In this document: piece by piece, positions 1,989-15,100 of the stretch
How positions within the stretch are numbered: the stretch's first letter is position 1
Layout of the letters: each line of letters begins with the position of its first letter
NCBI GenBank assembly: GCA_946965045.2
Contig: OX337228.1
Span: forward strand, 5,208,001-5,272,000
Source: Epithemia pelagica
Taxonomy: Eukaryota; Protista; Bacillariophyta
Direction of reading: 5' to 3'
DNA length: 64,000 nt
Notes under the pieces: generated by a model
Seen by the model: the letters and a program-made list of their open reading frames with translations, nothing else
Databases searched by the model: none
Told to the model about the DNA's origin: nothing
Position numbers and translations under genes: made by a program

Positions 1989-3036
1989 TCACTCGGCTTT
2001 GCCCAGTTGGGCCGCCATCACGGCCATCACCGTCCACATTCGGTTCTCAGCCTCGGGGAAAACAAGCGATTGTTCGCTGTAGAACACTTCATCTGACACC
2101 TCCTCAGGGTGACGGGGAAGACAGTGCAAGAACACAGCTCCATCGTTGGCCTGCGCCATCAGAGACGAGTTGACTTGATATCCCTCAAAATCAGCCACGC
2201 GTTTCTTGTATTCTTCTTCCTGGCCCATGCTTACCCAGGTATCAGTTACAACGACATCGGCACCCTTCACTGCGTCTGCGGCCACAGTAGTCGTCATAAT
2301 TTTGGAACCACTACCGGATGCGATTGTTTTTGTGGTCTCTAACACTTTGGCAATCGGTTCATAGCCTACAGGAGTTGCAATGTTGACATTCATGCCCAAA
2401 ATGGCACATCCCAACATGAGGTCATGCAAAACGTTGTTTCCGTCGCCAACCCACGCCAGCGTTCTCCCCGACAAATCTGCTCCAAATTTTTCTTGCAAAG
2501 TCATCAAGTCAGCCAACGTCTGAAGAGGATGATGCATGTCTGAGAGAGCGTTGATCACCGGAGCAGTGCTGTACTTTGCAAGTTCCACAACTGAGTCATG
2601 GCCGTACACACGTGCCAATATGATATCATTATAACGTGCCAATACATTTGCAGTATCGCGCATACTCTCATTGACGCCAAGTTGGATATCACTTGGTCCG
2701 AGAAAAAGGGCATGTCCACCCAACAAGGCCATCCCTGTCTCGGTCGAAACACGCGTACGCGTCGATCGCTTTTGGAAAATCATGGACATGGACATGCCAG
2801 TCAGAGGACGGGGAAGCGAAGAGGCGTTTGTTTTGTCACTGTACACTTTCTTGAAGTTTCGCGACAAATCTAAAAGCCCTTCCAACTCGGCCTTGCTGTA
2901 GCGGATGGTATTGACGTGAAGATTGGTTAGACCAAGGCCACAGATTCGACGGATGATCTCCAACGCCCGGCAGTACTTACGAGAGTTGGTCGATGGACAT
3001 GAAGTCCTTGCCCTTTAACGAAGCCACAGCACTCAT
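1989..3036 (-). CDS. OTC: Ornithine carbamoyltransferase
   Basis: Motifs STRT, HPLQ and FLHCLP. GT-AG intron 2896-2980 joins MSAVASLKGKDFMSIDQLS to KAELEGLLDLS. Further 5' exons are possible (see findings). Confidence 0.95.
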
Positions 3037-4043: not shown

Positions 4044-7000
4044 CTAGAAGTGAGAAGCATGGACTTCGAGGTCTTGGAGTTCTTCGACATGAGTTTTGCC
4101 CATTGTGTCTGGAAAGGAAGACTGATTGGTCAAGGCCATGACGTCTCCGTGTCCAACCGTTGTATATCGCAACTCGCATGTAAGCTGTGCAGTGCTTCCT
4201 TCCATTCTTCCCGGAGCCGCCGACAGAACGCACCAGGTGGAACCAGTCATTGATGAGGGGAGTACAGCTATCGGAACTTGCAACAATGGTTGAATCGCCT
4301 CTTCGGATGACTCCGCTACTACAAAGGCAATGTCCGTCAGTGTCCTACCGTTCTTCTCCGACAATCCTGCTTGATTGGTGACGCGAGCTTGAATGACCAA
4401 ATGGCGAGGGAAGAAATGCTTGACAATCCAAACTTCAGGCATGTTGTTGCTACCACCACTTGACCCTCCCGATGTCCGCGCACGGAATGGCTTGGTCGAG
4501 TGCAGGGGATCTCCTAGATTTAAGCTCTGGATTTGCGGTACAACATGCAAATTTGCCTGTGCTTTCAATTGAGCCGACGTCAATTGCTCCTTGAGACGCA
4601 GATATCTCGCGCGAAGTAGTGCTGATGTTACTGTGAGTCGGCGTACTTGGGATTCGCTGTCAACCAAGGCGGGGATGAGAAAAGGACGAGCGACAGCCGA
4701 TACAGGAGTATCTGGCGGCAATAATTGGAGAGCTGCTGCGCGATCAATGGAGGCTCGTCGTAACGCCAACAGTTGAATGGCAGCAGCACATCCCTTCTCA
4801 GTATCTTCGGACTCCAGCGCCACTCGCATCAATGGTAGATAGGCATTGTTGTCTTCGAGAGATGCAGTTGGATCATCTTCTGTTTTTCCATCATCTCCCA
4901 GAGAACCAGGAACCACAACCTGGTTCGAACGTTGGCGCTTTTCCAGAGCTGCTTGCTGTCTTTGATGTCGATCGTCACAGTACTCCAGAGCCAAGTCGAG
5001 ACTCTTCAAGTCGTTGTAAAGAATTCTCAGGGCCTCTTCATGTTTTCCCAGCCTTCCAAGAATCAGTGCCTTTTCGGGGAGAAAGGATGGTGGTAAAGAT
5101 TCTAGGATACGATCTGGCCGGACTCGGCTCAGAGGCCAACGCAGAAGGTGCCGAAGCTTGGCGCGACAAGTTCGACCAGCTTCCGTCTCCTCTTCACCGG
5201 AAGGTGCTACATCATCACTTCGTTCTGAAATGATACCTTCCAACAACAACAACGCTAGTTCATCATGAAAATTTGCAACAGCGGCTTCAGGACTGTCCTC
5301 TTGTGATGAAGGGGGATGATGAAATACCATGGAATTTTCTTCTGGTTCGATATCATCCGGTCGACCTGTCGAAATCCCCGTGGCAGATTCCAGGAATGTT
5401 ATCGCCAAAGCCCGTCCTGATTCCAACGGCAGTGAACTATGGTTTTTCCCGTACGTTTCCGAGTGAACAGGATTGTTGCTGTCGTAAGGAACCTTCGGAC
5501 GAATGGATTTCAAAAGATTCACTACACGATATACGTAGTCCGTCGACCGAAAAGGATCATCTCGTGGAGACGTGCTCCGCCACTGTGTTTCATTCTGTGG
5601 ATGTTGTGAAGTGAAGACAGAGAGACCAAGCCGTGGGTTACTTTCGAGCAAAGAATGAGTTGCCGGTGATCGTAGAACTAGTTCCCGTGCATCTTCTTGT
5701 CCACAATACCAAAGTTCACTCAAATGAGTGGCCATGTACGACTCGTACTTGATTCTTGACCACTGGCCTCCTCGACCACCAGGGCCAGCGTCCGAAGAAG
5801 GGTTCTGCTGAAGCCTTTCCGTTGCCACTTCCATGGCACTCTCATGTTGACCGCAACTTCGTAACAACCAGATCGACGCTTCAATGTAGTCCGTCGAAAC
5901 TTGTAAGGGTCGATGAATACGTGGTATAGCAGGAGCCTTGGGAGTGGACGCATAAGTGCGAACCAAAGAGAACGCTTGAGACGCTTCGCGCAAAAGTTGG
6001 TCCGTTACTTGTTGCCCTACCAGCACGGCTGATTCATCTACCTGACTCGCCAAGACGACACCCATCTCTGAGGCACAGGCCTTGGCCGCTCGACTCGCCA
6101 AGGCGGCGGCAGGTGGTGACAGCTGACTCGCCACCAAACACAGGAGTGCAGTGCTTGTCAACAAGGCCGATGATTGTGCGGCCGTTAGAACACTCGAAAA
6201 CATGCGCGTTCCGCCCTTCTCGGTATTTGTGCTACCATCTTCGGCGGACCATTTGCCTTGGAAGCCACCGCCCTCACCGCCGGCTGCAGCCAAAGTATTG
6301 GCAGAGGAAGAGACCATGGCGTATGATTCATGAGATGGCCATCCCGACGAAGCCCCGCTTTCCCAATCGCATAACCCTAGAACAGCTTCCAAGTATGCCT
6401 TCAGTAGAACACGTGCTTGTGCAGTAGCTTCCGGTCCCACATAAGATGTGGCAGTGAATGACGCTTGGACGGCTTTTGCTACATCGGTGCGCGGAAATCC
6501 ATTGCCACCAAAGGCATCAATAGCATGTCGTATTAATCGGTCCGCCAAATCTTGGGCTGTATCAGGGCGGCATTGCAAGACTTTTGCTTCGCCCGCGTAC
6601 GAAATGCCCACAATCCAAGGCAATGTCCAAGATGACGAAATTGTAGAAGATGATGATTGATTGGGCTGGTCATTCCACACAGAATGTATCGCATTGATGT
6701 TGCTACTCCCGGGGGCGGTAGTGGCTTGGACAGTCCGAAGCGTAAAGAAATCATTGGGCCGTGTTCCAATTTCCACTGTTCGCAAGGACACAGCGAGGCA
6801 GGAGGGTGATCTCACGGAGATGAGACCATCCGACATGAGGATGGCCACGAAGGGCCAAGAGGCTGATGCGGCCAGAATGGGAGACGCTGTGGTGACAATT
6901 CCATTCCGTGGTTTGTTGCTCCCGGACAACCGTGGTTGACTTGGAGGCCCATAGTACAAATCGACACAAGCACATTCCCTTCCATTTGCTAAAAATACAC

Positions 7001-8168
7001 ACGACCAATCTGCCTCCAAGGAAACATCCTTCAAATCCAACACTACTGCTGGATGGACTTGCGATGATTGAGTCCAATGGACTAATTTGACGCAATCCGT
7101 CTTGGAGGCATCTCCATCGCCTCCTCCCGTATTAGACCCTGCAAAGATTGCACGCGTATTGAAATGTTCATCGGCCATCTCGTCGACATCTTCGTCATCA
7201 TCTTCATCCCTATGGATTTCTTCTCCTGCCACGGCATAAAAGGCATGCCCGACGCAGCCCACAACCACACGTCCATCTGCCACGACGGCCAAGGCATCGG
7301 ATCCGCAGCGAACAGGGCCTGGCCACACACGGGGACCAAACTGAAGTTGCGGGAGATTCTTGAGCTTGTTACGGTTCAAGTTGCTGTTGCGCCGATCGGA
7401 TGGTTCGGTCAAGGGTGCCAAGGCCGACGTCGGTACGCGGAGCGTAAACACACTGCGTCCTGCCGTTGCATAAACACGTCCATACGCAGCGACAGCGGCA
7501 GATAATCGAGGCAAAGCAAGGGCCGGTATTCGGTTGCTATTGTTCAACACATGAAAGGCACCGTGTTGGAGTGATACCCAATAGGCAGCGTAGGCACCCG
7601 GCTGCGCGGCTGATGATCCTCTAGGATCATCTACCAAGATCAGAAAAAGTGGAGGAAGGGACAAATTGGCATTGTTGTGAAGATAAATACCATCTGCGTT
7701 GACCCAAATACAAGATATAACAGGTCCAGGAAGGCTAGTACTCCCCAAATCCACAGGATACAACATTCGTGGTAACGTTGTCGCTGCCGGTGTCGAAGAT
7801 CCTCGTGACGTCCCTGCAGAACTTGTTGTTCCAGATGTCCCACTCATTCCGAGTGGGGCCGAAATTCGAGTGGCGTTGGGTCCCGATGACGATGATAATG
7901 TATTGGTGGATGGTTGGTTGCTGCTCATCCGGCCGAGGCTCAGAAAGCCCGTTTTTGTGGCCGGCGACGTCGGTGAATTCGTGCGGTAGCATCGATAATG
8001 CAAGCTCCCTCGATCCGTGCCGTACACCACAGCCATGGTGGAAGATATATTGGACACATTGTTTGGCGCGGATGAAGACGACGACGACGAGGCCGTCGAC
8101 AAGGGGAAAACGCACAAACTGTGGGGACTGTAGTTGGCGTACAAATCCCAGGTTGCTTCCGTTGACAT
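4044..8168 (-). CDS. Vps39/Vam6/TGFBRAP1-like tethering protein with a C-terminal gamma-COP appendage-like domain
   Basis: Single 1385-codon ORF, likely start MSTEATWDLY at 8168. Helical-repeat motif LGRLGKHEEALRILYNDLKSLDLALEYCD is typical of Vps39-family C-termini. The last ~170 aa align by eye with the gamma-COP appendage. Confidence 0.8.
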   Translation of the reverse strand: MSTEATWDLYANYSPHSLCVFPLSTASSSSSSSAPNNVSNISSTMAVVYGTDRGSLHYRCYRTNSPTSPATKTGFLSLGRMSSNQPSTNTLSSSSGPNATRISAPLGMSGTSGTTSSAGTSRGSSTPAATTLPRMLYPVDLGSTSLPGPVISCIWVNADGIYLHNNANLSLPPLFLILVDDPRGSSAAQPGAYAAYWVSLQHGAFHVLNNSNRIPALALPRLSAAVAAYGRVYATAGRSVFTLRVPTSALAPLTEPSDRRNSNLNRNKLKNLPQLQFGPRVWPGPVRCGSDALAVVADGRVVVGCVGHAFYAVAGEEIHRDEDDDEDVDEMADEHFNTRAIFAGSNTGGGDGDASKTDCVKLVHWTQSSQVHPAVVLDLKDVSLEADWSCVFLANGRECACVDLYYGPPSQPRLSGSNKPRNGIVTTASPILAASASWPFVAILMSDGLISVRSPSCLAVSLRTVEIGTRPNDFFTLRTVQATTAPGSSNINAIHSVWNDQPNQSSSSTISSSWTLPWIVGISYAGEAKVLQCRPDTAQDLADRLIRHAIDAFGGNGFPRTDVAKAVQASFTATSYVGPEATAQARVLLKAYLEAVLGLCDWESGASSGWPSHESYAMVSSSANTLAAAGGEGGGFQGKWSAEDGSTNTEKGGTRMFSSVLTAAQSSALLTSTALLCLVASQLSPPAAALASRAAKACASEMGVVLASQVDESAVLVGQQVTDQLLREASQAFSLVRTYASTPKAPAIPRIHRPLQVSTDYIEASIWLLRSCGQHESAMEVATERLQQNPSSDAGPGGRGGQWSRIKYESYMATHLSELWYCGQEDARELVLRSPATHSLLESNPRLGLSVFTSQHPQNETQWRSTSPRDDPFRSTDYVYRVVNLLKSIRPKVPYDSNNPVHSETYGKNHSSLPLESGRALAITFLESATGISTGRPDDIEPEENSMVFHHPPSSQEDSPEAAVANFHDELALLLLEGIISERSDDVAPSGEEETEAGRTCRAKLRHLLRWPLSRVRPDRILESLPPSFLPEKALILGRLGKHEEALRILYNDLKSLDLALEYCDDRHQRQQAALEKRQRSNQVVVPGSLGDDGKTEDDPTASLEDNNAYLPLMRVALESEDTEKGCAAAIQLLALRRASIDRAAALQLLPPDTPVSAVARPFLIPALVDSESQVRRLTVTSALLRARYLRLKEQLTSAQLKAQANLHVVPQIQSLNLGDPLHSTKPFRARTSGGSSGGSNNMPEVWIVKHFFPRHLVIQARVTNQAGLSEKNGRTLTDIAFVVAESSEEAIQPLLQVPIAVLPSSMTGSTWCVLSAAPGRMEGSTAQLTCELRYTTVGHGDVMALTNQSSFPDTMGKTHVEELQDLEVHASHF

Positions 8169-8294
8169 ATTAAAAATAGACTGGAGGGAAAAGGAGAGCA
8201 ATTACCATTCAAAGAATTGATTGGAAGGGCCGAATACAAGACGAGTCGACATGAAATCTTTTTATTTTATGGTTCTATGTAGTGGTTTGTGGTG

Positions 8295-11200
8295 CTAAGC
8301 GGCCGAACCGCATAGTAAGTGGGGCGTTTCTTCTCGGGGGAAGAATGTGGCTATTGGGAATGGAGTGTACAAGGGCGGTTGTGGGGCGAATCCTTGTTGT
8401 GTTAACCTTGCCCGCTGGGTTTTCTGGTATCTGCTTTCATATTCTTGGTTGCGTAGTGCCGAAATTTGTTTGTTTAGATGTTTGGCCAAGGACGTAACTA
8501 GGGCGTGTCCGAGTGACGCCTTTGCGTAATGTCCTATCGAGTGGATGTGTGCTTCGTCGTATCGAAATCTTGGTGATCGTTTGGTGGCTTTGTTGGCGAT
8601 GTTGTTTGGAGCGTATTCGATTTCCTGGTAGAGGTCATAGGCGGCGGTGTGTTGTTTGCTTCTTGAGGGTGACCGTCCGAAGTGTGCATCTGGCCATTGT
8701 GGTGGGATGGCCGAGGAGAATTCATGTGGCAAGTCGTCCTGGTGGAAGAGAAGGCGCTGGGCGAAGGATCCAAGGGATCCGAGATGATCAACGGTAAACG
8801 GGATCAAATATACTCCGTTTGCAAGAAGGTGTTTTGCTGTGTTGTCGTCATGGCAGAATTTCGAACGGGCTGCTTCCTGGTGCGGTCTGGAGGCTGCAAG
8901 GCCAAGGGCACTGTTGTCGACCGGGACGGGAAGTGGTGTTCGAGCATGAGGGGGCGGGATGGTGACATCGATGGCCACATAGTTGAAGGGTTCGTTTTTC
9001 TGTGGTTGTTTCAACAACAATCCAACGTCGGCTGGTCTCACATTTCTTGTGTGTTGTGGGGCCAAACCGGGAGGTTCAATGTGGACGTCCTTGCAGTCCT
9101 CTACGTAGCCGGCCGTGGGTGCCAGGCGGGAGAGGAGGTCGTAGACGGTGTCCCTTACTGCATTGGAGAGGGCCGTCTTCGGAGCCATGCTGCACGAAAA
9201 AAGATGATCGCCCTGTGGGTCTAGGGTGGGACAGGAGGGGCATCGGCATTTCCCTCGGAGGTGGTCTGGGAGGACTGGAAGGCGGAGCTTGCGTCGCAGG
9301 GCGGTGAGAAACAGGTCGTTGGGGATTCGGAAGTGTTCGGCCGTGCGTGGGAGGTGAAGGGCTAGGCTTGTGAGTGGGGACAGGGCTGAAGGGAGACTGG
9401 GGAGCAGTTCTGGTGGTGTGGCAGAGAGGAGGGATGGGACGAGGTGTTCCACCAGAGTGTGGTGGGCCAGTTGGTGGTGTGTGTTCTTGTCGTACAGGTC
9501 TGTGTTCGTTAGTGGGGCCGGAGCAAGCTCGTGGGTGTAGAGTGCAAGGGAGCGACGGAAAGCCTGGAACCACGGGAGTTCACTGTGTTGCCAATCGGTG
9601 AAAGCAGCCTTGTGTGTGGGGGGTACTGGCCAGTCCTTGGAGGAGGCTAGTTTGATGGATCTCACTGTTTGTGTCAAGAGACGTGGTCGAGCGCTGGCTG
9701 CCGGGCTGTGGTAACCCAGTCCTCCAAGGCGGTTTGGAAGGGCGGCCATGATTGTGGTCATGGTTGTGATTTGGTGTGCCGGTGTGGACGTGATCTTGGC
9801 GAGGAATGCAGCAATCAAACCGTCCGCCTGGGTGGTGGTGGGACTGTCCCAAAGGGTGGTGGTTGCCGCGTTGGAAGGGTGTGCGAGGACCATGTCTGTG
9901 GGCAGCAAATGCAGGATCGACGGTACGAGCGAGTACCGGAAAAGGTGACTTTGCGTTTGTAGGTCAGTGAGCTCGGTGAGCAGGTCTACGTTTTGTTGCA
10001 TTTGGGTGAGTCTCTTTTGGATGTATTGGCGCGCAAAAGCTTGGGAGCCGACCGGTTGGCCGAGGAACCTGGTTCCCGTGGTGATTTCTGCGGCCGTTGG
10101 GTTTCCAGGGTTGAGGTGTCGGAGGGCATCGTAGAGGTGTTGTTGCGCCTGTGTTGGTAGGTATCCGTCGGTTGTGGCGGTGGTGGCGGTTGTTGTGGTT
10201 AGGATTTGTGTTTTTGCTTTGTTCAGTTGGACTCCGAGCGGTGCGCCGAGTTCTTCGAAACGGGCCAGAAACCACGGTAAGTCTTCGTGTGGCAGGCAAA
10301 TTGATGTGTCGTCCATTATGGAAGCTGTGTGTGCTTGTCCGCCTTTGCCATCGTCATGTGCGTCCCCTGCTTTCTTCCGGCGGAGAGCGCGTTGGAGTTG
10401 TTCTTTATTGATCTGTATGGTCACGGTGAGGAGGACCAGGCAGGAGAATAATGGGCTCAGTGGGCATCCTTGTGGGAAGCCTTCGTCTTGGAGGAGTTTG
10501 TCGGCCACTCCCTTGTCGTTGAAGAACCAAGAGGGTGTTTGTGTTTGCGTCAAGAGGTCGTACAGGGGAAGAAGGGGTGTCGTTTCTACGCGAGAGGCCA
10601 GTATTCGCCGTGCCTCTGTTCGTGACGTGTTGTTGAACATGTTGTGGAGGTCCAGGCACACCAAAGCTCTTGTTGGTGTTTGGGGTAGCTCAATGTATTT
10701 TGCTACTTCGTTGGTTGTTGTTTGCGCCACGAAGTCGATCCCTCCTGGGATTTGGATCCCATACTGGCCGCCGCTGAGCAAGAGCGGCGTGATTTGGTCG
10801 GTGATGTGTGTGAGGGCGATTTTGGCGGCGACGCGCCGCAAACCGGTGCCGATGCCGATGGGTCTTAGGCGATGGAGTTTGTTTGGGTCCTTGTGGAGGG
10901 CAAGGAAGTAGTTGCTCCCCAGGAGTTGGTGGACGAGAGTCGGAACTTGGGCGGTGAGGATGAGTTGGAACAGGGCTTGGAGGTTGTGTTGGTATGGCCG
11001 TGTTGCCGTGGCAGCTCTGGTGGTGCGGTGTAGCGCCATTTCGACAATGGCGTCCGTGCAGGTGGCGAAGGGGCCCGATGCCGTGCCTCGTTTCATTTGT
11101 CGCATGGCAAGGTCAAACAGGTCTGGGTCGATGTGGATGTAGTTTTCTTCTGGTGGTGGTCGGTCTGGCTGGTTGCCGCGGTTCCTTGTTGTTGTTGGCG

Positions 11201-12176
11201 GTGGTTCCCGTCTCGCTGGGAACAGATCTTGTTTTATGGCGGCAATGCGTTCGGGCGTGAGTGTGGCGGTGGGCATGTGAGAGGTGAGCCGGGAGTATGC
11301 GGTGGAGTAGTTGCCGAGGTCCGCGGCTCGTTGCGCGGCTGCCAGGCGGCTGGGATGAATGGGTCCGCTTTGGAGGTGTTGTCTCGTGTGTTGTTGTCGT
11401 TGTTTTTTCTTGTTGTTGCCGTTTGTTGTTCGCTTGCTGGTGGAGGTTGCTGGCGGTGGTTGTGACCATACCAAATGGTGCAGTTCTTCGATGCGTCCGG
11501 CCTTTAGCAGGGCGTTTCTTGCTCGGAAGGCTTCGGCGTGGGTGGTGTGTCCTGTTGTTTCAGGTGGCGCCAAGAGCATGGGTTCAAGAAGGAGGAGGAG
11601 TTTCCAGAAGGGACTTGCTTCCACAAGGGCTGCCGGTGGTTTCGTTTCTCGGATGATGGAGTCTTGGAGTTTCGGTGTGGCCTTGAGGATCCATTGCACG
11701 GTGTTGTTGTAGGTGACGTAAAAGGCTTTCTTGGTTGGATGTTTGAGGTTGTGCCATACGCTGCGTCGAAACGGGGGCGGTGTTGGGTCAAGTTGGTGAA
11801 GGAAGGCGAGGCCCGTCTTCCACTGCGTTGCTATGTGAGGATCATCGTGTCGGTACGTGTGGAGGACAAGGTCCAAGTTGTTCTCTTTTCTAGTATGTTT
11901 ATTTTCGTGGTGGTTGTGTAAGTGGCCCTCGGTGGTGAAAATGGCGGTTGGTTTGTTGCAGGTGTGGCAAACATGGAGGCCGTGTTGTTGACAGAAGGAG
12001 TGGGAGAGGTATGTGGACGGTCTTGTTTCCCCGTGTGCTTCGATGAGGTGTTGTTTTAGTTGGAGGGTTTGTGTGTGTTTGTTTTGGTTGCGTGACCGGT
12101 GTGTTGGTGGGTCGGGCCGCCATGGACAATGGGGGACAGGGCATGCCCGGAGGGTGGGTCGCCGTAATGTACTCAT
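8295..12176 (-). CDS. Retrotransposon ORF2: two C2H2 fingers, reverse transcriptase, CCHC-like finger, REL endonuclease
   Basis: C2H2 fingers CPVPHC...HLIEAH and CHTC...HNHHENKH. RT motifs LRPIGIGTGLRR, QYGIQIPGG, LDLHNMFN, GFPQGCPLSP, IMDD, LNKAKT, FLGQPVG. C-terminal CRCPSC...HLFSC, RPAD, AIDVT. Frame is open from 12293, but ATG 12176 is favoured. Confidence 0.92.
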   Translation of the reverse strand: MSTLRRPTLRACPVPHCPWRPDPPTHRSRNQNKHTQTLQLKQHLIEAHGETRPSTYLSHSFCQQHGLHVCHTCNKPTAIFTTEGHLHNHHENKHTRKENNLDLVLHTYRHDDPHIATQWKTGLAFLHQLDPTPPPFRRSVWHNLKHPTKKAFYVTYNNTVQWILKATPKLQDSIIRETKPPAALVEASPFWKLLLLLEPMLLAPPETTGHTTHAEAFRARNALLKAGRIEELHHLVWSQPPPATSTSKRTTNGNNKKKQRQQHTRQHLQSGPIHPSRLAAAQRAADLGNYSTAYSRLTSHMPTATLTPERIAAIKQDLFPARREPPPTTTRNRGNQPDRPPPEENYIHIDPDLFDLAMRQMKRGTASGPFATCTDAIVEMALHRTTRAATATRPYQHNLQALFQLILTAQVPTLVHQLLGSNYFLALHKDPNKLHRLRPIGIGTGLRRVAAKIALTHITDQITPLLLSGGQYGIQIPGGIDFVAQTTTNEVAKYIELPQTPTRALVCLDLHNMFNNTSRTEARRILASRVETTPLLPLYDLLTQTQTPSWFFNDKGVADKLLQDEGFPQGCPLSPLFSCLVLLTVTIQINKEQLQRALRRKKAGDAHDDGKGGQAHTASIMDDTSICLPHEDLPWFLARFEELGAPLGVQLNKAKTQILTTTTATTATTDGYLPTQAQQHLYDALRHLNPGNPTAAEITTGTRFLGQPVGSQAFARQYIQKRLTQMQQNVDLLTELTDLQTQSHLFRYSLVPSILHLLPTDMVLAHPSNAATTTLWDSPTTTQADGLIAAFLAKITSTPAHQITTMTTIMAALPNRLGGLGYHSPAASARPRLLTQTVRSIKLASSKDWPVPPTHKAAFTDWQHSELPWFQAFRRSLALYTHELAPAPLTNTDLYDKNTHHQLAHHTLVEHLVPSLLSATPPELLPSLPSALSPLTSLALHLPRTAEHFRIPNDLFLTALRRKLRLPVLPDHLRGKCRCPSCPTLDPQGDHLFSCSMAPKTALSNAVRDTVYDLLSRLAPTAGYVEDCKDVHIEPPGLAPQHTRNVRPADVGLLLKQPQKNEPFNYVAIDVTIPPPHARTPLPVPVDNSALGLAASRPHQEAARSKFCHDDNTAKHLLANGVYLIPFTVDHLGSLGSFAQRLLFHQDDLPHEFSSAIPPQWPDAHFGRSPSRSKQHTAAYDLYQEIEYAPNNIANKATKRSPRFRYDEAHIHSIGHYAKASLGHALVTSLAKHLNKQISALRNQEYESRYQKTQRARLTQQGFAPQPPLYTPFPIATFFPREETPHLLCGSAA

Positions 12177-15100
12177 AGGGCCCCTTGGCCCTTGGAAGCA
12201 TGCGGGACCACATGGCCGGTGCGGGGGCCGGCGACGGGGGAAGGGGACGACGTGGGGCGTGGCCTCTGCACTAGTCGTTCTGCGTATTCCCATACGTCTT
12301 GCGCGTCGGTGTCCGTGCTGAAGGACGTAATCCCGTCCAGATATTGTTCCAGGACGGGCAGTTGTTGCTCATTGTTCGAGGCGACAAAGTCAATGATTTG
12401 TCGGAGTTCCTCGGTCGTGTGTTGCGAGTTCCATTGCTGGAACAGCGGGCGTGAACTGTCGGACGGGTCGGAGACGTTGTCCCATTCGTCTGGAACGTCC
12501 ATGTCCTCCATGTCGACGTCTGTGGGGCGATCGTCGTATCTGTCTCTGTCCTCCTCGTACTCTGCCTCGGGGTTGTCGTCGTCTTGCAGGGGCGCGTATT
12601 GGTTGGAGGACGTGTTGCTTGTGTCTGATGGTGGCGCTCTCGGTGCTAGGGACGACGTAGCTTCTGCCACTTTCTTCCAGTCCGTGCCGTCGTCGTATGG
12701 GTCGTCTTCGGTGTCGTCGGCATTGCTGGCGTCGTTTTGGTTGCTGTGGTGGTTGTCTTGGTTCGGCCGTTTCCTCGGTGGTGGTGCGCCTGGTGATGTG
12801 GATCGGGCTCTCGTTTCCCGTGTGTTGCTGTTCTCGTCGTCGTCGGCCGTTGTGGGGTGTGCTTTCTTGACGATTCTCCGTGTGAGATCGAGGAGGCGTG
12901 ACGTGTGGTTGGCTTGGATTGGTTGGTGGTCGTTGGAGGTGTTGTTGCGTGGCGGTGGGGCCGCTGCTGTGACCGAGGCCATGGTTTGTCGTAGTATGTT
13001 TCGTGGGAACCCGGGGTACTGGCGAATGGTTGTCGTGGTGAGGTGGAGGGTATCCGGAGTACGGAGGAGGTAAAGTACAAAAGCAATCGGCTGTTGTTCA
13101 TGGTGGCAAAACTCGGGAAAGGCCGCTTGGTAGTTTTCCATTTGTGTCAGCTGTTCCCACTCTTCGTCGTCAGCGAGGTCGTTGAGGGGGAAGAGGCGAA
13201 TGCGGACGCTTGCGGAGAAGTATTGGTCCAGTTCACGGAGTGCTTCCAGTGTCGTGGTACGTTGTTGTTGTGTTTTGGGCACTGGGATCAACTGGATGAT
13301 GTTGTCGCGCCAGCGGAGGTCGTTGTTGGCCGTTGCTTTGTGGAGCTCGTTGTATGCACGGAGAATGGTCTCGAACATGCGTTTGGAGGACGCCGAGATG
13401 TAGGTGACAGGGACAGTGCCGCGTTGTTTGGATTTGAAGTCGCCGCTGAAATTTCCGTCGCGGCATCCGATGTGTTTGTGAAAGTCGTCCGACATTTGGA
13501 GGTGTGTTGGGAGGAAGCCTAGGAGTTGGTCGTGGATGGCGTCCGTGAGGTCGATGTATCCCCGTTTGTGTTTGATCGCGCTAGCCGGGATGCCAACGAT
13601 GATACCGTGTGTCTCACATGTTCTGTTGTTGCAGGCAGGGGCGTAAATGTCGATGTCCTTGTATCTTGGGTTTACCGTGGGGTTGGACTGCGGCGATCCG
13701 TGACGGAGAATCTGTTGCAGGCCGTGGTTGTCGTTGCGGAAATCATCCCGGTGGTGTTTATGCCACATTTGCGTGACAAACCGGATGCCTTGCTCCTGAA
13801 ATACCTCGGTGTCGAAGGCGTCATTAATGGGGGCGGGGCGGAGCGTAAGGTGGAAGGAAGACGTGTATCCGCGCCCTCCTCGTTCGTTATTGTTGTTGTT
13901 TCGGTTGTTGCTGTTTCGCGGTGGTTGTTTTGTTTCCAGGAACTCGATCCTGTGCATTTCCAGCATCATTGGTTCTTCCCGGCATCGGTGGTGTTGCAGC
14001 ACTCGGTGGATGTGTTGCTTTAGGGTGGTTTCCGTGACCCGTGGGAGTCGCGACTCTTCTTGGTGGTTCGCTTTGTGGCGCACCACCAGTGTAAGGTGGA
14101 TTGTTGCCGGTGGGTCCGTTGTTGTGGGGCGTTTCGGTGTTGCCCTGTATGGATTGAAGGTGGTCTCCGTGGTTGCCTCCATGGTGTCGTTGGTGCCGTC
14201 CTGGTTTTCCGCCGTGTCTTGGGTGTTGTCCTGTTCGTCATTTTTGGGCGTGGCATTGTCCTGGTTGTCGCTGTCCGTTGTGTCGTTATCGTTGGGCTCC
14301 GTGGGTTGGTTGCCGTCTCGGCCTTCCATGAATTGGTTGTCCTCCCTATTGGGAGGGGTGGAGGTGTTGTGGGAGTAGCGAAGCATTGCCTCCTGTGTGT
14401 TTTCGGTCGCATGGTTGAAGATCCTGGTCGTTGCGGTGGTGGCGGCCAATGTGCTGGAGCGTCGGACGGACAGGGACGGTGGGGATGCAATGCGTGGCTC
14501 CGAGGTCTGGATGGTGTCGTCCTGGGTGGTGGTTTGGTTGGTGTCGTCGAGGGTGGTGTCTGGGCTGTTTTTGTTGTTTTTGGTGGTTTCCGTGGGCGTG
14601 TTTTCTTTTTTGTCTTTTTTGTCGGTGTTTTTGTTGTTGTTGTGGTGGTCAGGGGTGATGGGGTTGGACGTGTCCGAGGATTGGGAGCAGGGAGGGTTCA
14701 ACGACGGCTTGGGTTGGTTGGCTTCCGGGTCGCCGCGGTTACCGAGCATGGTGGCTGCCTTTGCACGGGTGAGAAGGGCGTGGTTGCGTGGAGCAGTGGT
14801 GCGTTTGGTGGACGGCGGTGGCTTCGTTGCGTTGGTGGCGGCGAACTTGGAGTGGGCTTGCATGGTCGCTGTTTGGCAGGGGGCTTGGTTGTTGCTGGCG
14901 AAGTTTTCGTTCTGGCGGGTACTCAGTGGCGAGGCGAACTTTTCCGACACTGTGAGTGGAGATCGTTGGGCTGCTTCATTTTGTTTGGCGACGGGGTGGT
15001 TGTGGCGATGATGACGTGGCTTGGACTCTTCTGTTACTGAGCGGTGGTGACGGCGCCAATCGACGACGTGTCGGTTTCCGTTTCCGTCGGTCTGTGTCCC

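What the first reader, a model, noticed from the sequence alone, without database searches (positions are those of the whole stretch)
4044..4620. Vps39-like tether fused to a gamma-COP appendage domain in place of the usual zinc finger
Seen: after the Vps39-type helical region the ORF continues in frame with LHVVPQIQSLNLGDPLHSTKP...WIVKHFFPRHLVIQARVTN...TLTDIAF...VPIAVLP...GSTWCVL...LTCELRYT...VEELQDLEVHASHF. Known: gamma-COP has LAAVPEF..LGPLFKSS...CTKHTFTNHMVFQFDCTN...TLENV...VPARSLP...GTCYTL...FSCMMKFT...YVLEDLEV, and Vps39/TGFBRAP1 normally end in a Cys/His finger. Inference: a tether-coat chimera that could link HOPS/CORVET-type tethering to coat-appendage partners, possibly for diatom-specific compartments.
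Basis: partly seen in the sequence, partly recalled or inferred. Interest (0 to 1): 0.7.

Follow-up and report, generated by a model that had tools for sequence, protein, structure and literature searches.

The report
Vps39 tether carrying a γ-COP ear
This diatom gene encodes a Vps39-type vesicle-tethering protein whose usual C-terminal zinc finger is replaced by half of the "ear" domain of the COPI coat protein γ-COP. The fusion is real, undescribed in the papers I could search, and shared by diatoms, brown algae and their relatives, so it is not diatom-specific.

Summary
Window 4044-8201 (minus strand) is one uninterrupted ORF. Its last ~170 residues match the γ-COP appendage Ig-like subdomain:
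- Pfam PF08752 scores 30.8 bits against a cut-off of 25.
- The family profile hits the crystal structures 1R4X and 1PZD at E about 1e-6.
- The AF2 model aligns to 1R4X at Z 16.7.

Only the β-sandwich half is present. The platform half, which carries the FxxxW partner site, is absent.

The body of the protein is Vps39-like. Less-diverged orthologues carry CNH, Vps39_1 and a strong PF08752 match. Their profile hits Chaetomium Vps39 (3e-19) and yeast Vam6 (2.5e-10), but Vps3 only at E about 1.

The architecture is not diatom-specific. It occurs in centric and pennate diatoms, Triparma, Aureoumbra, Chrysoparadoxa, Phaeothamnion and brown algae. An oomycete and two opisthokont lineages keep the finger. 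A single acquisition from γ-COP is compatible with the trees but not proven.

Databases already tag these proteins automatically, and a 2013 survey listed a Thalassiosira protein of identical length as plain Vps39.

Verdict: a new variant of a known kind, of moderate interest. Function is inferred only.

The parts
4044..8168 (-). Coding sequence of the Vps39-like protein: 1374 aa from the ATG at 8168, with the stop codon at 4044-4046. The open frame itself extends upstream to 8201.
   Evidence: One search lists the ORF. The consensus N-terminus of the homologues ('MSxEAxWDL') matches the Met at ORF codon 12. More than 140 homologues cover 99% of the length.
6567..8168 (-). N-terminal β-propeller region (ORF residues ~12-545), interrupted by low-complexity Ser/Thr- and acid-rich inserts.
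   Evidence: The AF2 model of the short orthologue P0059 shows strands over residues 1-383, followed by helices. The window protein has no Pfam CNH hit. CNH is detected in the less-diverged orthologues P0162, P0176 and P0269. Profile A4 hits the Chaetomium Vps39 N-terminal domain 7ZTY_A at E 3e-19.
4557..6566 (-). α-solenoid (ORF residues ~546-1215), the Vps39-type helical body.
   Evidence: Models. The A3 profile hits CNH+Vps39_1 proteins at E 1e-61 to 1e-21. hhalign of the diatom family against the other ochrophyte family gives probability 100%, E 1e-78. In the Atlas fold search the helical part is nearest to Vam6/Vps39 clusters.
4959..5084 (-). Conserved '...LILGRLGKHEEAL..L..A..YC' repeat (residues 1040-1081), the motif shared with Vps39 and Vps41.
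   Evidence: Weak Pfam TPR_Vps41 hit of 21 bits, below its cut-off, seen in 28 of 29 family members. The A1 profile aligns this motif to yeast Vam6 residues 840-882 at E 0.36.
4560..4844 (-). Last helices of the solenoid (residues ~1120-1214). This is the most conserved helical stretch and corresponds to the C-terminal helical region of Vam6/Vps39 that precedes the finger.
   Evidence: Column identity is 0.80-0.87 among 87 homologues. Profile A4 positions 805-996 align to Vam6 residues 795-970 at E 2.5e-10. Canonical relatives continue from this point into a CxxC...H..C finger.
4047..4553 (-). γ-COP-derived segment (residues 1217-1385). It comprises the lead-in strand region 'LHVVPQ..LNLGDPLHSTKP', a Gly/Ser loop (4437-4484) and the Ig-like β-sandwich (4059-4436), and then the protein ends.
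   Evidence: Pfam PF08752 covers residues 1256-1349. The HMMER alignment to 1R4X/1PZD starts at the lead-in. VIA-align maps model residues 258-426 to 1R4X residues 616-763 at Z 16.7. Column identity is 0.66-0.81, above the gene's average.

Best explanation
The gene encodes the ochrophyte version of Vps39/Vam6, the Rab7-side subunit of the HOPS endolysosomal tether. It has an N-terminal β-propeller and a Vps39-type α-solenoid. At the point where canonical Vps39 carries a small C-terminal zinc finger, it instead carries the Ig-like β-sandwich subdomain of the γ-COP appendage.

Shown:
- The fusion is real and in frame.
- The appended piece derives from γ-COP. It is still 41-44% identical to genuine γ-COPs in slowly evolving lineages.
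- It was truncated exactly at the sandwich/platform boundary.
- It is among the best-conserved parts of the protein.
- The architecture is shared by diatoms, bolidophytes, pelagophytes, brown algae and allies, but not by an oomycete or two opisthokont lineages.

Inferred:
- The domain was captured once in an early ochrophyte and inherited vertically.
- The protein still assembles into HOPS through its conserved last helices, the Vps11-binding region in yeast.
- The sandwich works as a protein-docking module at that end of the tether. In COPI, the sandwich base docks on a β-propeller of β'-COP. By analogy, it more likely grips a β-propeller or another partner surface than recruits ArfGAP-type ligands, whose FxxxW platform site is absent.
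For: Reality of the gene:
- One uninterrupted ORF.
- More than 140 homologues at 90% clustering, nearly all pre-annotated with PF08752, including complete MMETSP transcripts.

γ-COP origin of the appended piece:
- (Z 16.7 to 1R4X, chain residues 616-763 only).
- Profile A4 against 1PZD gives E 3.6e-28.
- The Ig part of P0162 is 41-44% identical to proteins with Adaptin_N + PF08752 + PF16381.
- All the Vps39-borne copies I compared end within a few residues of the sandwich.

Vps39 identity:
- The orthologues P0162, P0176, P0184 and P0269 carry CNH and/or Vps39_1 plus PF08752.
- Profile A4 hits Chaetomium Vps39 7ZTY_A at 3e-19 and Vam6 7ZU0_E at 2.5e-10, against Vps41 at 0.03 and Vps3 at 0.99.
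- The best named non-ochrophyte hit is a sponge Vps39 at E 1e-52.
- Klinger 2013, Table S2, lists one 1461-aa T. pseudonana protein as Vps39 and none as Vps3. The family's T. pseudonana member, XP_002292835, has the same length.

Distribution: Thalassiosira, Epithemia, Nitzschia, Fragilariopsis, Triparma, Aureoumbra, Chrysoparadoxa, Ectocarpus, Pylaiella, Phaeothamnion and Discosporangium.

Single origin:
- The Ig-domain tree separates Vps39-borne from γ-COP copies (support 83/75) and mirrors the body tree.
- Constraining all Ig-bearers into one clade costs 4.5 lnL, p-AU 0.29.

Conservation: Ig columns show identity 0.66-0.81.

Roles of the subdomains in COPI: PMC5482573 and PMC2262067.
Against: - The window protein itself gives no Pfam CNH or Vps39_1 hit. 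Its N-terminal half does not align with the other ochrophyte family in hhalign. The Vps39 assignment therefore rests on transitive homology of the C-terminal half plus the predicted fold.
- The whole-chain fold search is generic protocoatomer.
- Yeast Vps3 is so divergent that the Vam6-versus-Vps3 contrast is weak evidence for orthology.
- The same well-supported clade also holds a finger-bearing sequence (P0243) and a 'tail-less' clade, both of unknown taxa. Losses, replacements or paralogy within ochrophytes are not excluded.
- There is no expression data for this genome.
- There is no interaction or localisation data at all, so the docking function is pure inference.
Confidence: 0.65

Rival explanations
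1. It is a lineage-specific paralogue of Vps39, not the HOPS subunit. In this reading ochrophytes also keep a canonical Vps39 or Vps3, and this protein belongs to a different, so far unknown tether or coat-like complex that uses the γ-COP sandwich.
For: - The diatom and bolidophyte clade sits on a very long stem of 2.4 substitutions per site.
- The family has lost recognisable CNH and Vps39_1 signatures.
- A finger-bearing sequence (P0243) and a tail-less clade fall in the same 99%-supported clade as the ochrophyte proteins.
- T. pseudonana retains Vps8, yet no Vps3 was found, so subunit usage in diatoms is unusual.
Against: - The HMM survey of Klinger 2013 found only one Vps39/Vps3-like protein in T. 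pseudonana.
- The word search with P0162 returned a single protein per named brown alga.
- Slowly evolving members look like ordinary Vps39 apart from the tail.
- The taxa of P0243 and of the tail-less clade are unknown. They may simply be other lineages.
Confidence: 0.15
2. The sandwich is only a structural substitute for the lost zinc finger. It packs against the HOPS core (the Vps11/Vps18 C-termini) or against Vps39 itself to stabilise the complex, and it recruits no external partner.
For: - It sits exactly where the finger sits in canonical Vps39.
- A tail-less clade shows that the finger position tolerates change.
- In COPI, both appendage sandwiches act as structural docking elements inside the coat (PMC5482573).
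Against: - At about 130 residues, the domain is much larger than a 40-residue finger.
- The segment contains a poorly conserved Gly/Ser-rich loop between its lead-in strands and the sandwich core, which suggests some mobility.
- Conservation as high as the rest of the core is equally compatible with an external ligand.
Confidence: 0.2
3. It is an artefact: a mis-assembly or read-through joining two genes, or a chance Ig-like resemblance.
For: None beyond the general possibility. There are no RNA runs for this genome.
Against: - The ORF is continuous.
- Four DNA runs hold 91-99% of the stretch's sampled words.
- More than 140 homologues from many genomes and transcriptomes show the same junction.
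- Sequence-level E-values against γ-COP reach 3.6e-28.
Confidence: 0.01

Closest known systems
Vps39 / Vam6 (HOPS tethering complex subunit; Pfam CNH + Vps39_1 + zf-Vps39_C)
   Same: - The order β-propeller then α-solenoid.
- The conserved 'LGR.G.HE.AL...YC' repeat.
- The conserved last helices, which align to Vam6 residues 795-970.
- Orthologues in slowly evolving ochrophytes still score for CNH and Vps39_1.
   Different: - There is no zinc finger; a γ-COP β-sandwich takes its place.
- The diatom members are 300-500 residues longer because of low-complexity inserts.
- The diatom members no longer reach the Pfam CNH or Vps39_1 thresholds.
γ-COP (coatomer γ subunit) appendage domain, PDB 1R4X / 1PZD
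   Same: - The Ig-like β-sandwich subdomain, including its lead-in segment, is homologous in sequence and in fold: Z 16.7, and 22-25% identity in diatoms against 41-44% in other ochrophytes.
   Different: - There is no Adaptin_N trunk.
- There is no platform subdomain, and therefore no FxxxW site.
- The domain is attached to a tether subunit instead of a coat adaptor.
GAE 'ear' domains of γ-adaptin and the GGAs
   Same: - A stand-alone appendage-type β-sandwich without a platform at the C-terminus of a trafficking protein. Such ears are known to bind accessory proteins.
- Structural similarity is Z about 9. PMC2262067 notes that platform-less ears bind ligands.
   Different: - There is no detectable sequence relationship.
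- The diatom domain is clearly nearer to γ-COP.
- The ligand motifs of GAE domains cannot be assumed here.
Vps3 / TGFBRAP1 (CORVET counterpart of Vps39)
   Same: The same overall CNH-solenoid-finger family and the same position in the Vps-C complexes.
   Different: The ochrophyte profile hits yeast Vps3 only at E 0.99, against 2.5e-10 for Vam6. The published survey filed a T. pseudonana protein of the same length under Vps39.

Membership tests
Vps39/Vam6 family | N-terminal CNH-type β-propeller (PF00780) | tested here: inconclusive
   The window protein gives no Pfam CNH hit, even at E 10. A β-propeller is predicted for the orthologue P0059 over residues 1-383. CNH is detected in P0162 (1e-14), P0176 and P0269, and profile A4 hits 7ZTY_A at 3e-19. 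However, hhalign does not extend the diatom/non-diatom alignment into the N-terminal half.
Vps39/Vam6 family | Vps39-type α-solenoid (Vps39_1 / CHCR-like repeats and the C-terminal helical region) | tested here: met
   Met through transitive homology, not through a direct Pfam hit. The A3 profile hits CNH+Vps39_1 proteins at E 1e-61 to 1e-21 and a finger-bearing one at 2.7e-23. hhalign of A2 against A4 gives E 1e-78. Profile A4 hits Vam6 at 2.5e-10. The window protein itself has only a sub-threshold TPR_Vps41 hit.
Vps39/Vam6 family | C-terminal zinc finger (PF10367 zf-Vps39_C) | tested here: not met
   There is no such hit and no Cys/His pattern; the γ-COP sandwich occupies the position. The canonical relatives P0243, P0282, P0285 and P0286 have the finger.
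Vps39/Vam6 family | Orthology to Vps39 rather than to Vps3/TGFBRAP1 | tested here: inconclusive
   Vam6 scores 2.5e-10 against 0.99 for Vps3. The best named outgroup hit is a sponge Vps39. Klinger 2013 filed the 1461-aa T. pseudonana protein under Vps39. No tree with Vps3/TGFBRAP1 references could be built with the searches available.
Vps39/Vam6 family | Assembly into HOPS via Vps11, and binding of Rab7/Ypt7 | not testable with these tools
   This needs co-purification, or co-elution in data such as the P. tricornutum CF-MS set PXD050670 named in PMC13261697.
Coatomer γ subunit (γ-COP) | Adaptin_N α-solenoid trunk (PF01602) | tested here: not met
   No PF01602 hit. The genuine γ-COPs P0321-P0334 have it.
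Coatomer γ subunit (γ-COP) | Appendage Ig-like β-sandwich subdomain (PF08752) | tested here: met
   30.8 to 37 bits against a cut-off of 25. 29 of 29 members hit it. 1R4X and 1PZD at E about 1e-6. Z 16.7.
Coatomer γ subunit (γ-COP) | Appendage platform subdomain with the FxxxW partner site (PF16381) | tested here: not met
   The protein ends a few residues after the sandwich. The VIA alignment covers 1R4X residues 616-763 only. All the Vps39-borne copies I compared end at the same place.

The most novel reading that the evidence does not exclude
The captured sandwich has kept the job it has in COPI, where its base docks on the second β-propeller of β'-COP. Ochrophyte HOPS would then physically engage the COPI outer coat, or another protocoatomer-type β-propeller. 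That would give these algae a direct tether-to-coat coupling acquired at about the time their complex plastid and its ER-continuous outer membrane arose. It could be used, for example, to capture coated carriers at the vacuole or at plastid-associated membranes.
Probability: 0.1. Interest if true: 0.8.

Novelty: new variant of a known kind. Interest (0 to 1): 0.5.

Why it matters
HOPS/CORVET subunits and vesicle coats descend from the same protocoatomer stock, but recent exchange of modules between them is not something the field has catalogued. Here a coat 'ear' half has been grafted onto the Vps11-proximal end of Vps39. It has been kept under strong constraint across a major algal radiation that includes diatoms and kelps.

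This gives three things:
- A clean molecular synapomorphy candidate for ochrophytes.
- A natural experiment on what the Vps39 C-terminal finger is for.
- A concrete handle (ΔIg alleles, pull-downs with the isolated sandwich) on the almost unexplored endolysosomal system of diatoms.

The feature is not diatom-specific, and it lacks the classical appendage ligand site.

Tried and rejected
- phmmer of the whole protein against PDB sequences found nothing; only profiles worked.
- The window protein and its diatom relatives give no direct Pfam CNH, Vps39_1 or zf-Vps39_C hit.
- Foldseek of the full-length model was generic: nucleoporins, IFT-A, GATOR2, Vps18 and a CORVET chain, apart from γ-COP. It cannot discriminate Vps39.
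- No RNA run exists for this genome.
- Attempts to assign taxa to the tail-less clade and to P0243 gave nothing usable. These were cluster look-ups, contig contexts L001-L003 and Atlas look-alikes.
- tblastn of a genuine γ-COP against the window found no γ-COP gene here. A separate intact γ-COP in this genome could therefore not be confirmed.
- Two AU tests were wrong. Two Ig-bearing diatom rows, named 'fam_...', were put on the wrong side of the constraint, which gave ΔlnL of 645 and 844. The corrected test is.
- timed out.
- Literature searches for Vps39 combined with diatom, stramenopile, Phaeodactylum, Ectocarpus, or appendage plus gamma-COP found no description of the fusion.
Full report
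**What is there.** Window 4044-8201 (minus strand) is a single uninterrupted ORF of 1385 codons. The consensus N-terminus of the homologues ('MSxEAxWDL') matches the ATG at 8168, which gives a 1374-aa protein. The only public model of this exact protein (P0001, 1294 aa) starts at an internal Met. The closest named relative is Epithemia clementina at 79% identity, so the window is probably from a rhopalodiacean diatom; that is an inference.

**The γ-COP piece is real.**
- Pfam PF08752 is named 'COP-gamma_platf' but models the Ig-like subdomain. It scores 30.8 bits on the whole protein and 37 bits on the last 191 residues, against a cut-off of 25.
- All 29 family members tested hit it, best E 8e-13.
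- A profile of the C-terminal 426 residues from 59 homologues (A1) hits the two γ-COP appendage crystal structures 1R4X and 1PZD at E 1e-6 and 2e-6. The alignment begins already in the lead-in segment ('LHVVPQ..LNLGDPLHSTKP' against 'LAAVPEF..LGPLFKSS') and runs to 'LQDLEV' against 'LEDLEV'.
- The AF2 model of that piece (pLDDT 85) shows helices followed by an eight-strand sandwich.
- Foldseek ranks γ-COP chains first, at E 5e-10 to 2e-8, and γ-adaptin/GGA ears next, around 1e-4.
- VIA-align gives Z 16.7 with rmsd 2.9 Å over 145 residues to 1R4X. The β-COP, α-adaptin and GAE ears reach only Z 9-11.
- The match covers γ1-COP residues 616-763 only. The platform subdomain (764-874) has no counterpart because the protein ends there. 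All the Vps39-borne copies I compared end within a few residues of the same point.

**The rest is Vps39-like, but this is visible only through relatives.**
- The window protein itself gives no CNH, Vps39_1 or finger hit, only a sub-threshold TPR_Vps41 match on the 'LGRLGKHEEAL...YC' repeat.
- An exhaustive profile search (A3, residues 370 to the end) found 624 proteins at E ≤ 1e-3.
- Beyond the diatom family come full-length proteins that Pfam reads as CNH and/or Vps39_1 plus a strong PF08752. P0162 scores 124 bits over the full length of the model, and P0176, P0169 and P0184 score 79-92 bits.
- Named members are Chrysoparadoxa australica, Aureoumbra lagunensis and Triparma columacea. Further named members are Ectocarpus, Pylaiella, Phaeothamnion and Discosporangium, and Thalassiosira pseudonana XP_002292835.
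- The diatom and non-diatom families align at hhalign probability 100%, E 1e-78, over the C-terminal ~560 columns. That covers half of the solenoid, the linker and the Ig part. The alignment does not extend into the N-terminal half.
- A profile of the non-diatom members (A4) hits the γ-COP appendage at 3.6e-28, the Chaetomium Vps39 N-terminal CNH domain 7ZTY_A at 3e-19 and yeast Vam6/Vps39 at 2.5e-10. It hits Vps41 at 0.03 and Vps3 at 0.99.
- The full-length model of a short orthologue shows a propeller (1-383), a solenoid (389-997) and a sandwich (1034-1154). Its fold matches are generic protocoatomer apart from γ-COP.
- Klinger et al. 2013 (PMC3785458, Table S2) list one T. pseudonana protein of 1461 aa under Vps39 and none under Vps3. 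For oomycetes they list both, with the Vps39_2/finger region. The equal length with XP_002292835 makes it very likely, though I did not prove it, that this family's member was counted as plain Vps39.

**In place of the finger.** Canonical relatives continue after the last helix into a CxxC...H..C finger. These are a sponge Vps39, two basidiomycete proteins, an Aphanomyces protein and the metagenomic P0243. All but Aphanomyces also carry a Pfam zf-Vps39_C call. In the window protein, the γ-COP-derived segment starts two residues after that helix. A third state also exists. A coherent clade of eight proteins of unknown taxa stops right after the helix ('...KKRNLQVVHQLLRVREVNLRT'). On contig L001 a convergent gene follows after 177 bp, so no hidden exon is likely.

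**Origin and history.**
- The Ig part of P0162 is 41-44% identical to genuine γ-COPs, which carry Adaptin_N, PF08752 and the PF16381 platform. The donor is therefore γ-COP, not a generic Ig fold.
- In an Ig-domain tree the Vps39-borne copies separate from the six γ-COP copies available (support 83/75). Their internal order repeats that of the body tree: a pelagophyte group, a brown-algal group, and diatoms plus Triparma on a long stem.
- With the Ig part removed, a 99%-supported clade excludes the oomycete and the opisthokonts. Inside it is an unresolved polytomy of the three Ig-bearing blocks, the tail-less clade and P0243.
- Forcing all Ig-bearers together costs 4.5 lnL, p-AU 0.29. The earlier tests were mis-specified and are void.
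- One capture in an early ochrophyte followed by vertical descent is therefore compatible with the data. Later loss or replacement in some lineages is not excluded.
- The Ig columns are among the best conserved of the gene, at 0.66-0.81 identity over 87 homologues. This argues for function.

**How it probably works (inference).**
- The conserved last helices correspond to the Vam6 region aligned. From published work on yeast HOPS, as I recall it, this is where Vps39 meets Vps11. Assembly into HOPS is therefore the default expectation.
- In the assembled COPI coat, the base of the γ-COP β-sandwich docks on the second β-propeller of β'-COP. The platform is exposed and carries the FxxxW site used by ArfGAP2 (PMC5482573; PMC2262067).
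- The more economical model is a docking module. It would be held by a segment containing a poorly conserved Gly/Ser-rich loop and would grip a β-propeller or another surface, either within HOPS or on another protocoatomer-type protein.
- Platform-less ears such as GAE domains show that a lone sandwich can be a ligand-binding unit.
- None of this is tested.

**Novelty.**
- UniProt already auto-names family members 'Coatomer gamma subunit appendage Ig-like subdomain domain-containing protein' or 'CNH domain-containing protein'. JGI's KOG label is 'Vam6/Vps39-like'.
- Five full-text searches found no paper that describes the fusion.
- The scan's own notes hold only this same finding.
- I rate it a new variant of a known kind. 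It is widespread in ochrophytes and not diatom-specific.

**Limits.**
- There are no RNA data for this genome. Complete MMETSP transcripts of orthologues support a single mRNA.
- No γ-COP gene lies in this window, so the separate intact γ-COP was not confirmed for this genome.
- All three word searches and the one exhaustive search were used. A Vps3-referenced tree and a proteome-by-proteome paralogue census could therefore not be done.

Noticed in passing
window 8295-12293 (-): A 1332-aa ORF with a reverse-transcriptase domain (RVT_1, E 1.6e-9) ends only ~127 bp upstream of the Vps39-like gene's ATG at 8168. A retroelement therefore sits where that gene's promoter should be. Another scan note (s1-239293) concerns this element.
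   Followed up: partly
window 1989-2963 (-): An intact ornithine/aspartate carbamoyltransferase gene (OTCace_N + OTCace, E 1e-42 and 1e-54) lies downstream of the finding.
   Followed up: partly
window 7929-8168 (-), N-terminus of the gene: The only public model of this exact protein (P0001, 1294 aa) starts at an internal Met (ORF codon 92). Homologues support the ATG at 8168, so the deposited model is probably N-terminally truncated.
   Followed up: partly
P0198, P0203, P0227, P0229, P0231, P0247, P0251, P0281; locus L001 6001-8952: A coherent clade of Vps39-like proteins (CNH + Vps39_1) of unknown taxa has neither finger nor Ig tail. It ends right after the last helix and falls in the same clade as the ochrophyte proteins.
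   Followed up: partly
P0243; loci L002/L003 10001-13183: A finger-bearing Vps39 from TARA and another marine metagenome, on contigs where every called gene is a single ORF, groups with the ochrophyte clade rather than with the oomycete. Its organism is unknown.
   Followed up: partly
P0288 and P0259 (EukProt entries): An 'Alexandrium tamarense' entry shares a ≥90%-identity cluster with the T. pseudonana protein. A 'Bolivina argentea' (foraminifer) entry nests among ochrophyte sequences. Both look like contamination or prey/kleptoplast-donor sequences in those transcriptomes.
   Followed up: no
Klinger 2013 Table S2: T. pseudonana is listed with Vps8 and a Vps39 but no Vps3. The diatom's CORVET/HOPS subunit complement may therefore be unusual, independently of the Ig tail.
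   Followed up: no
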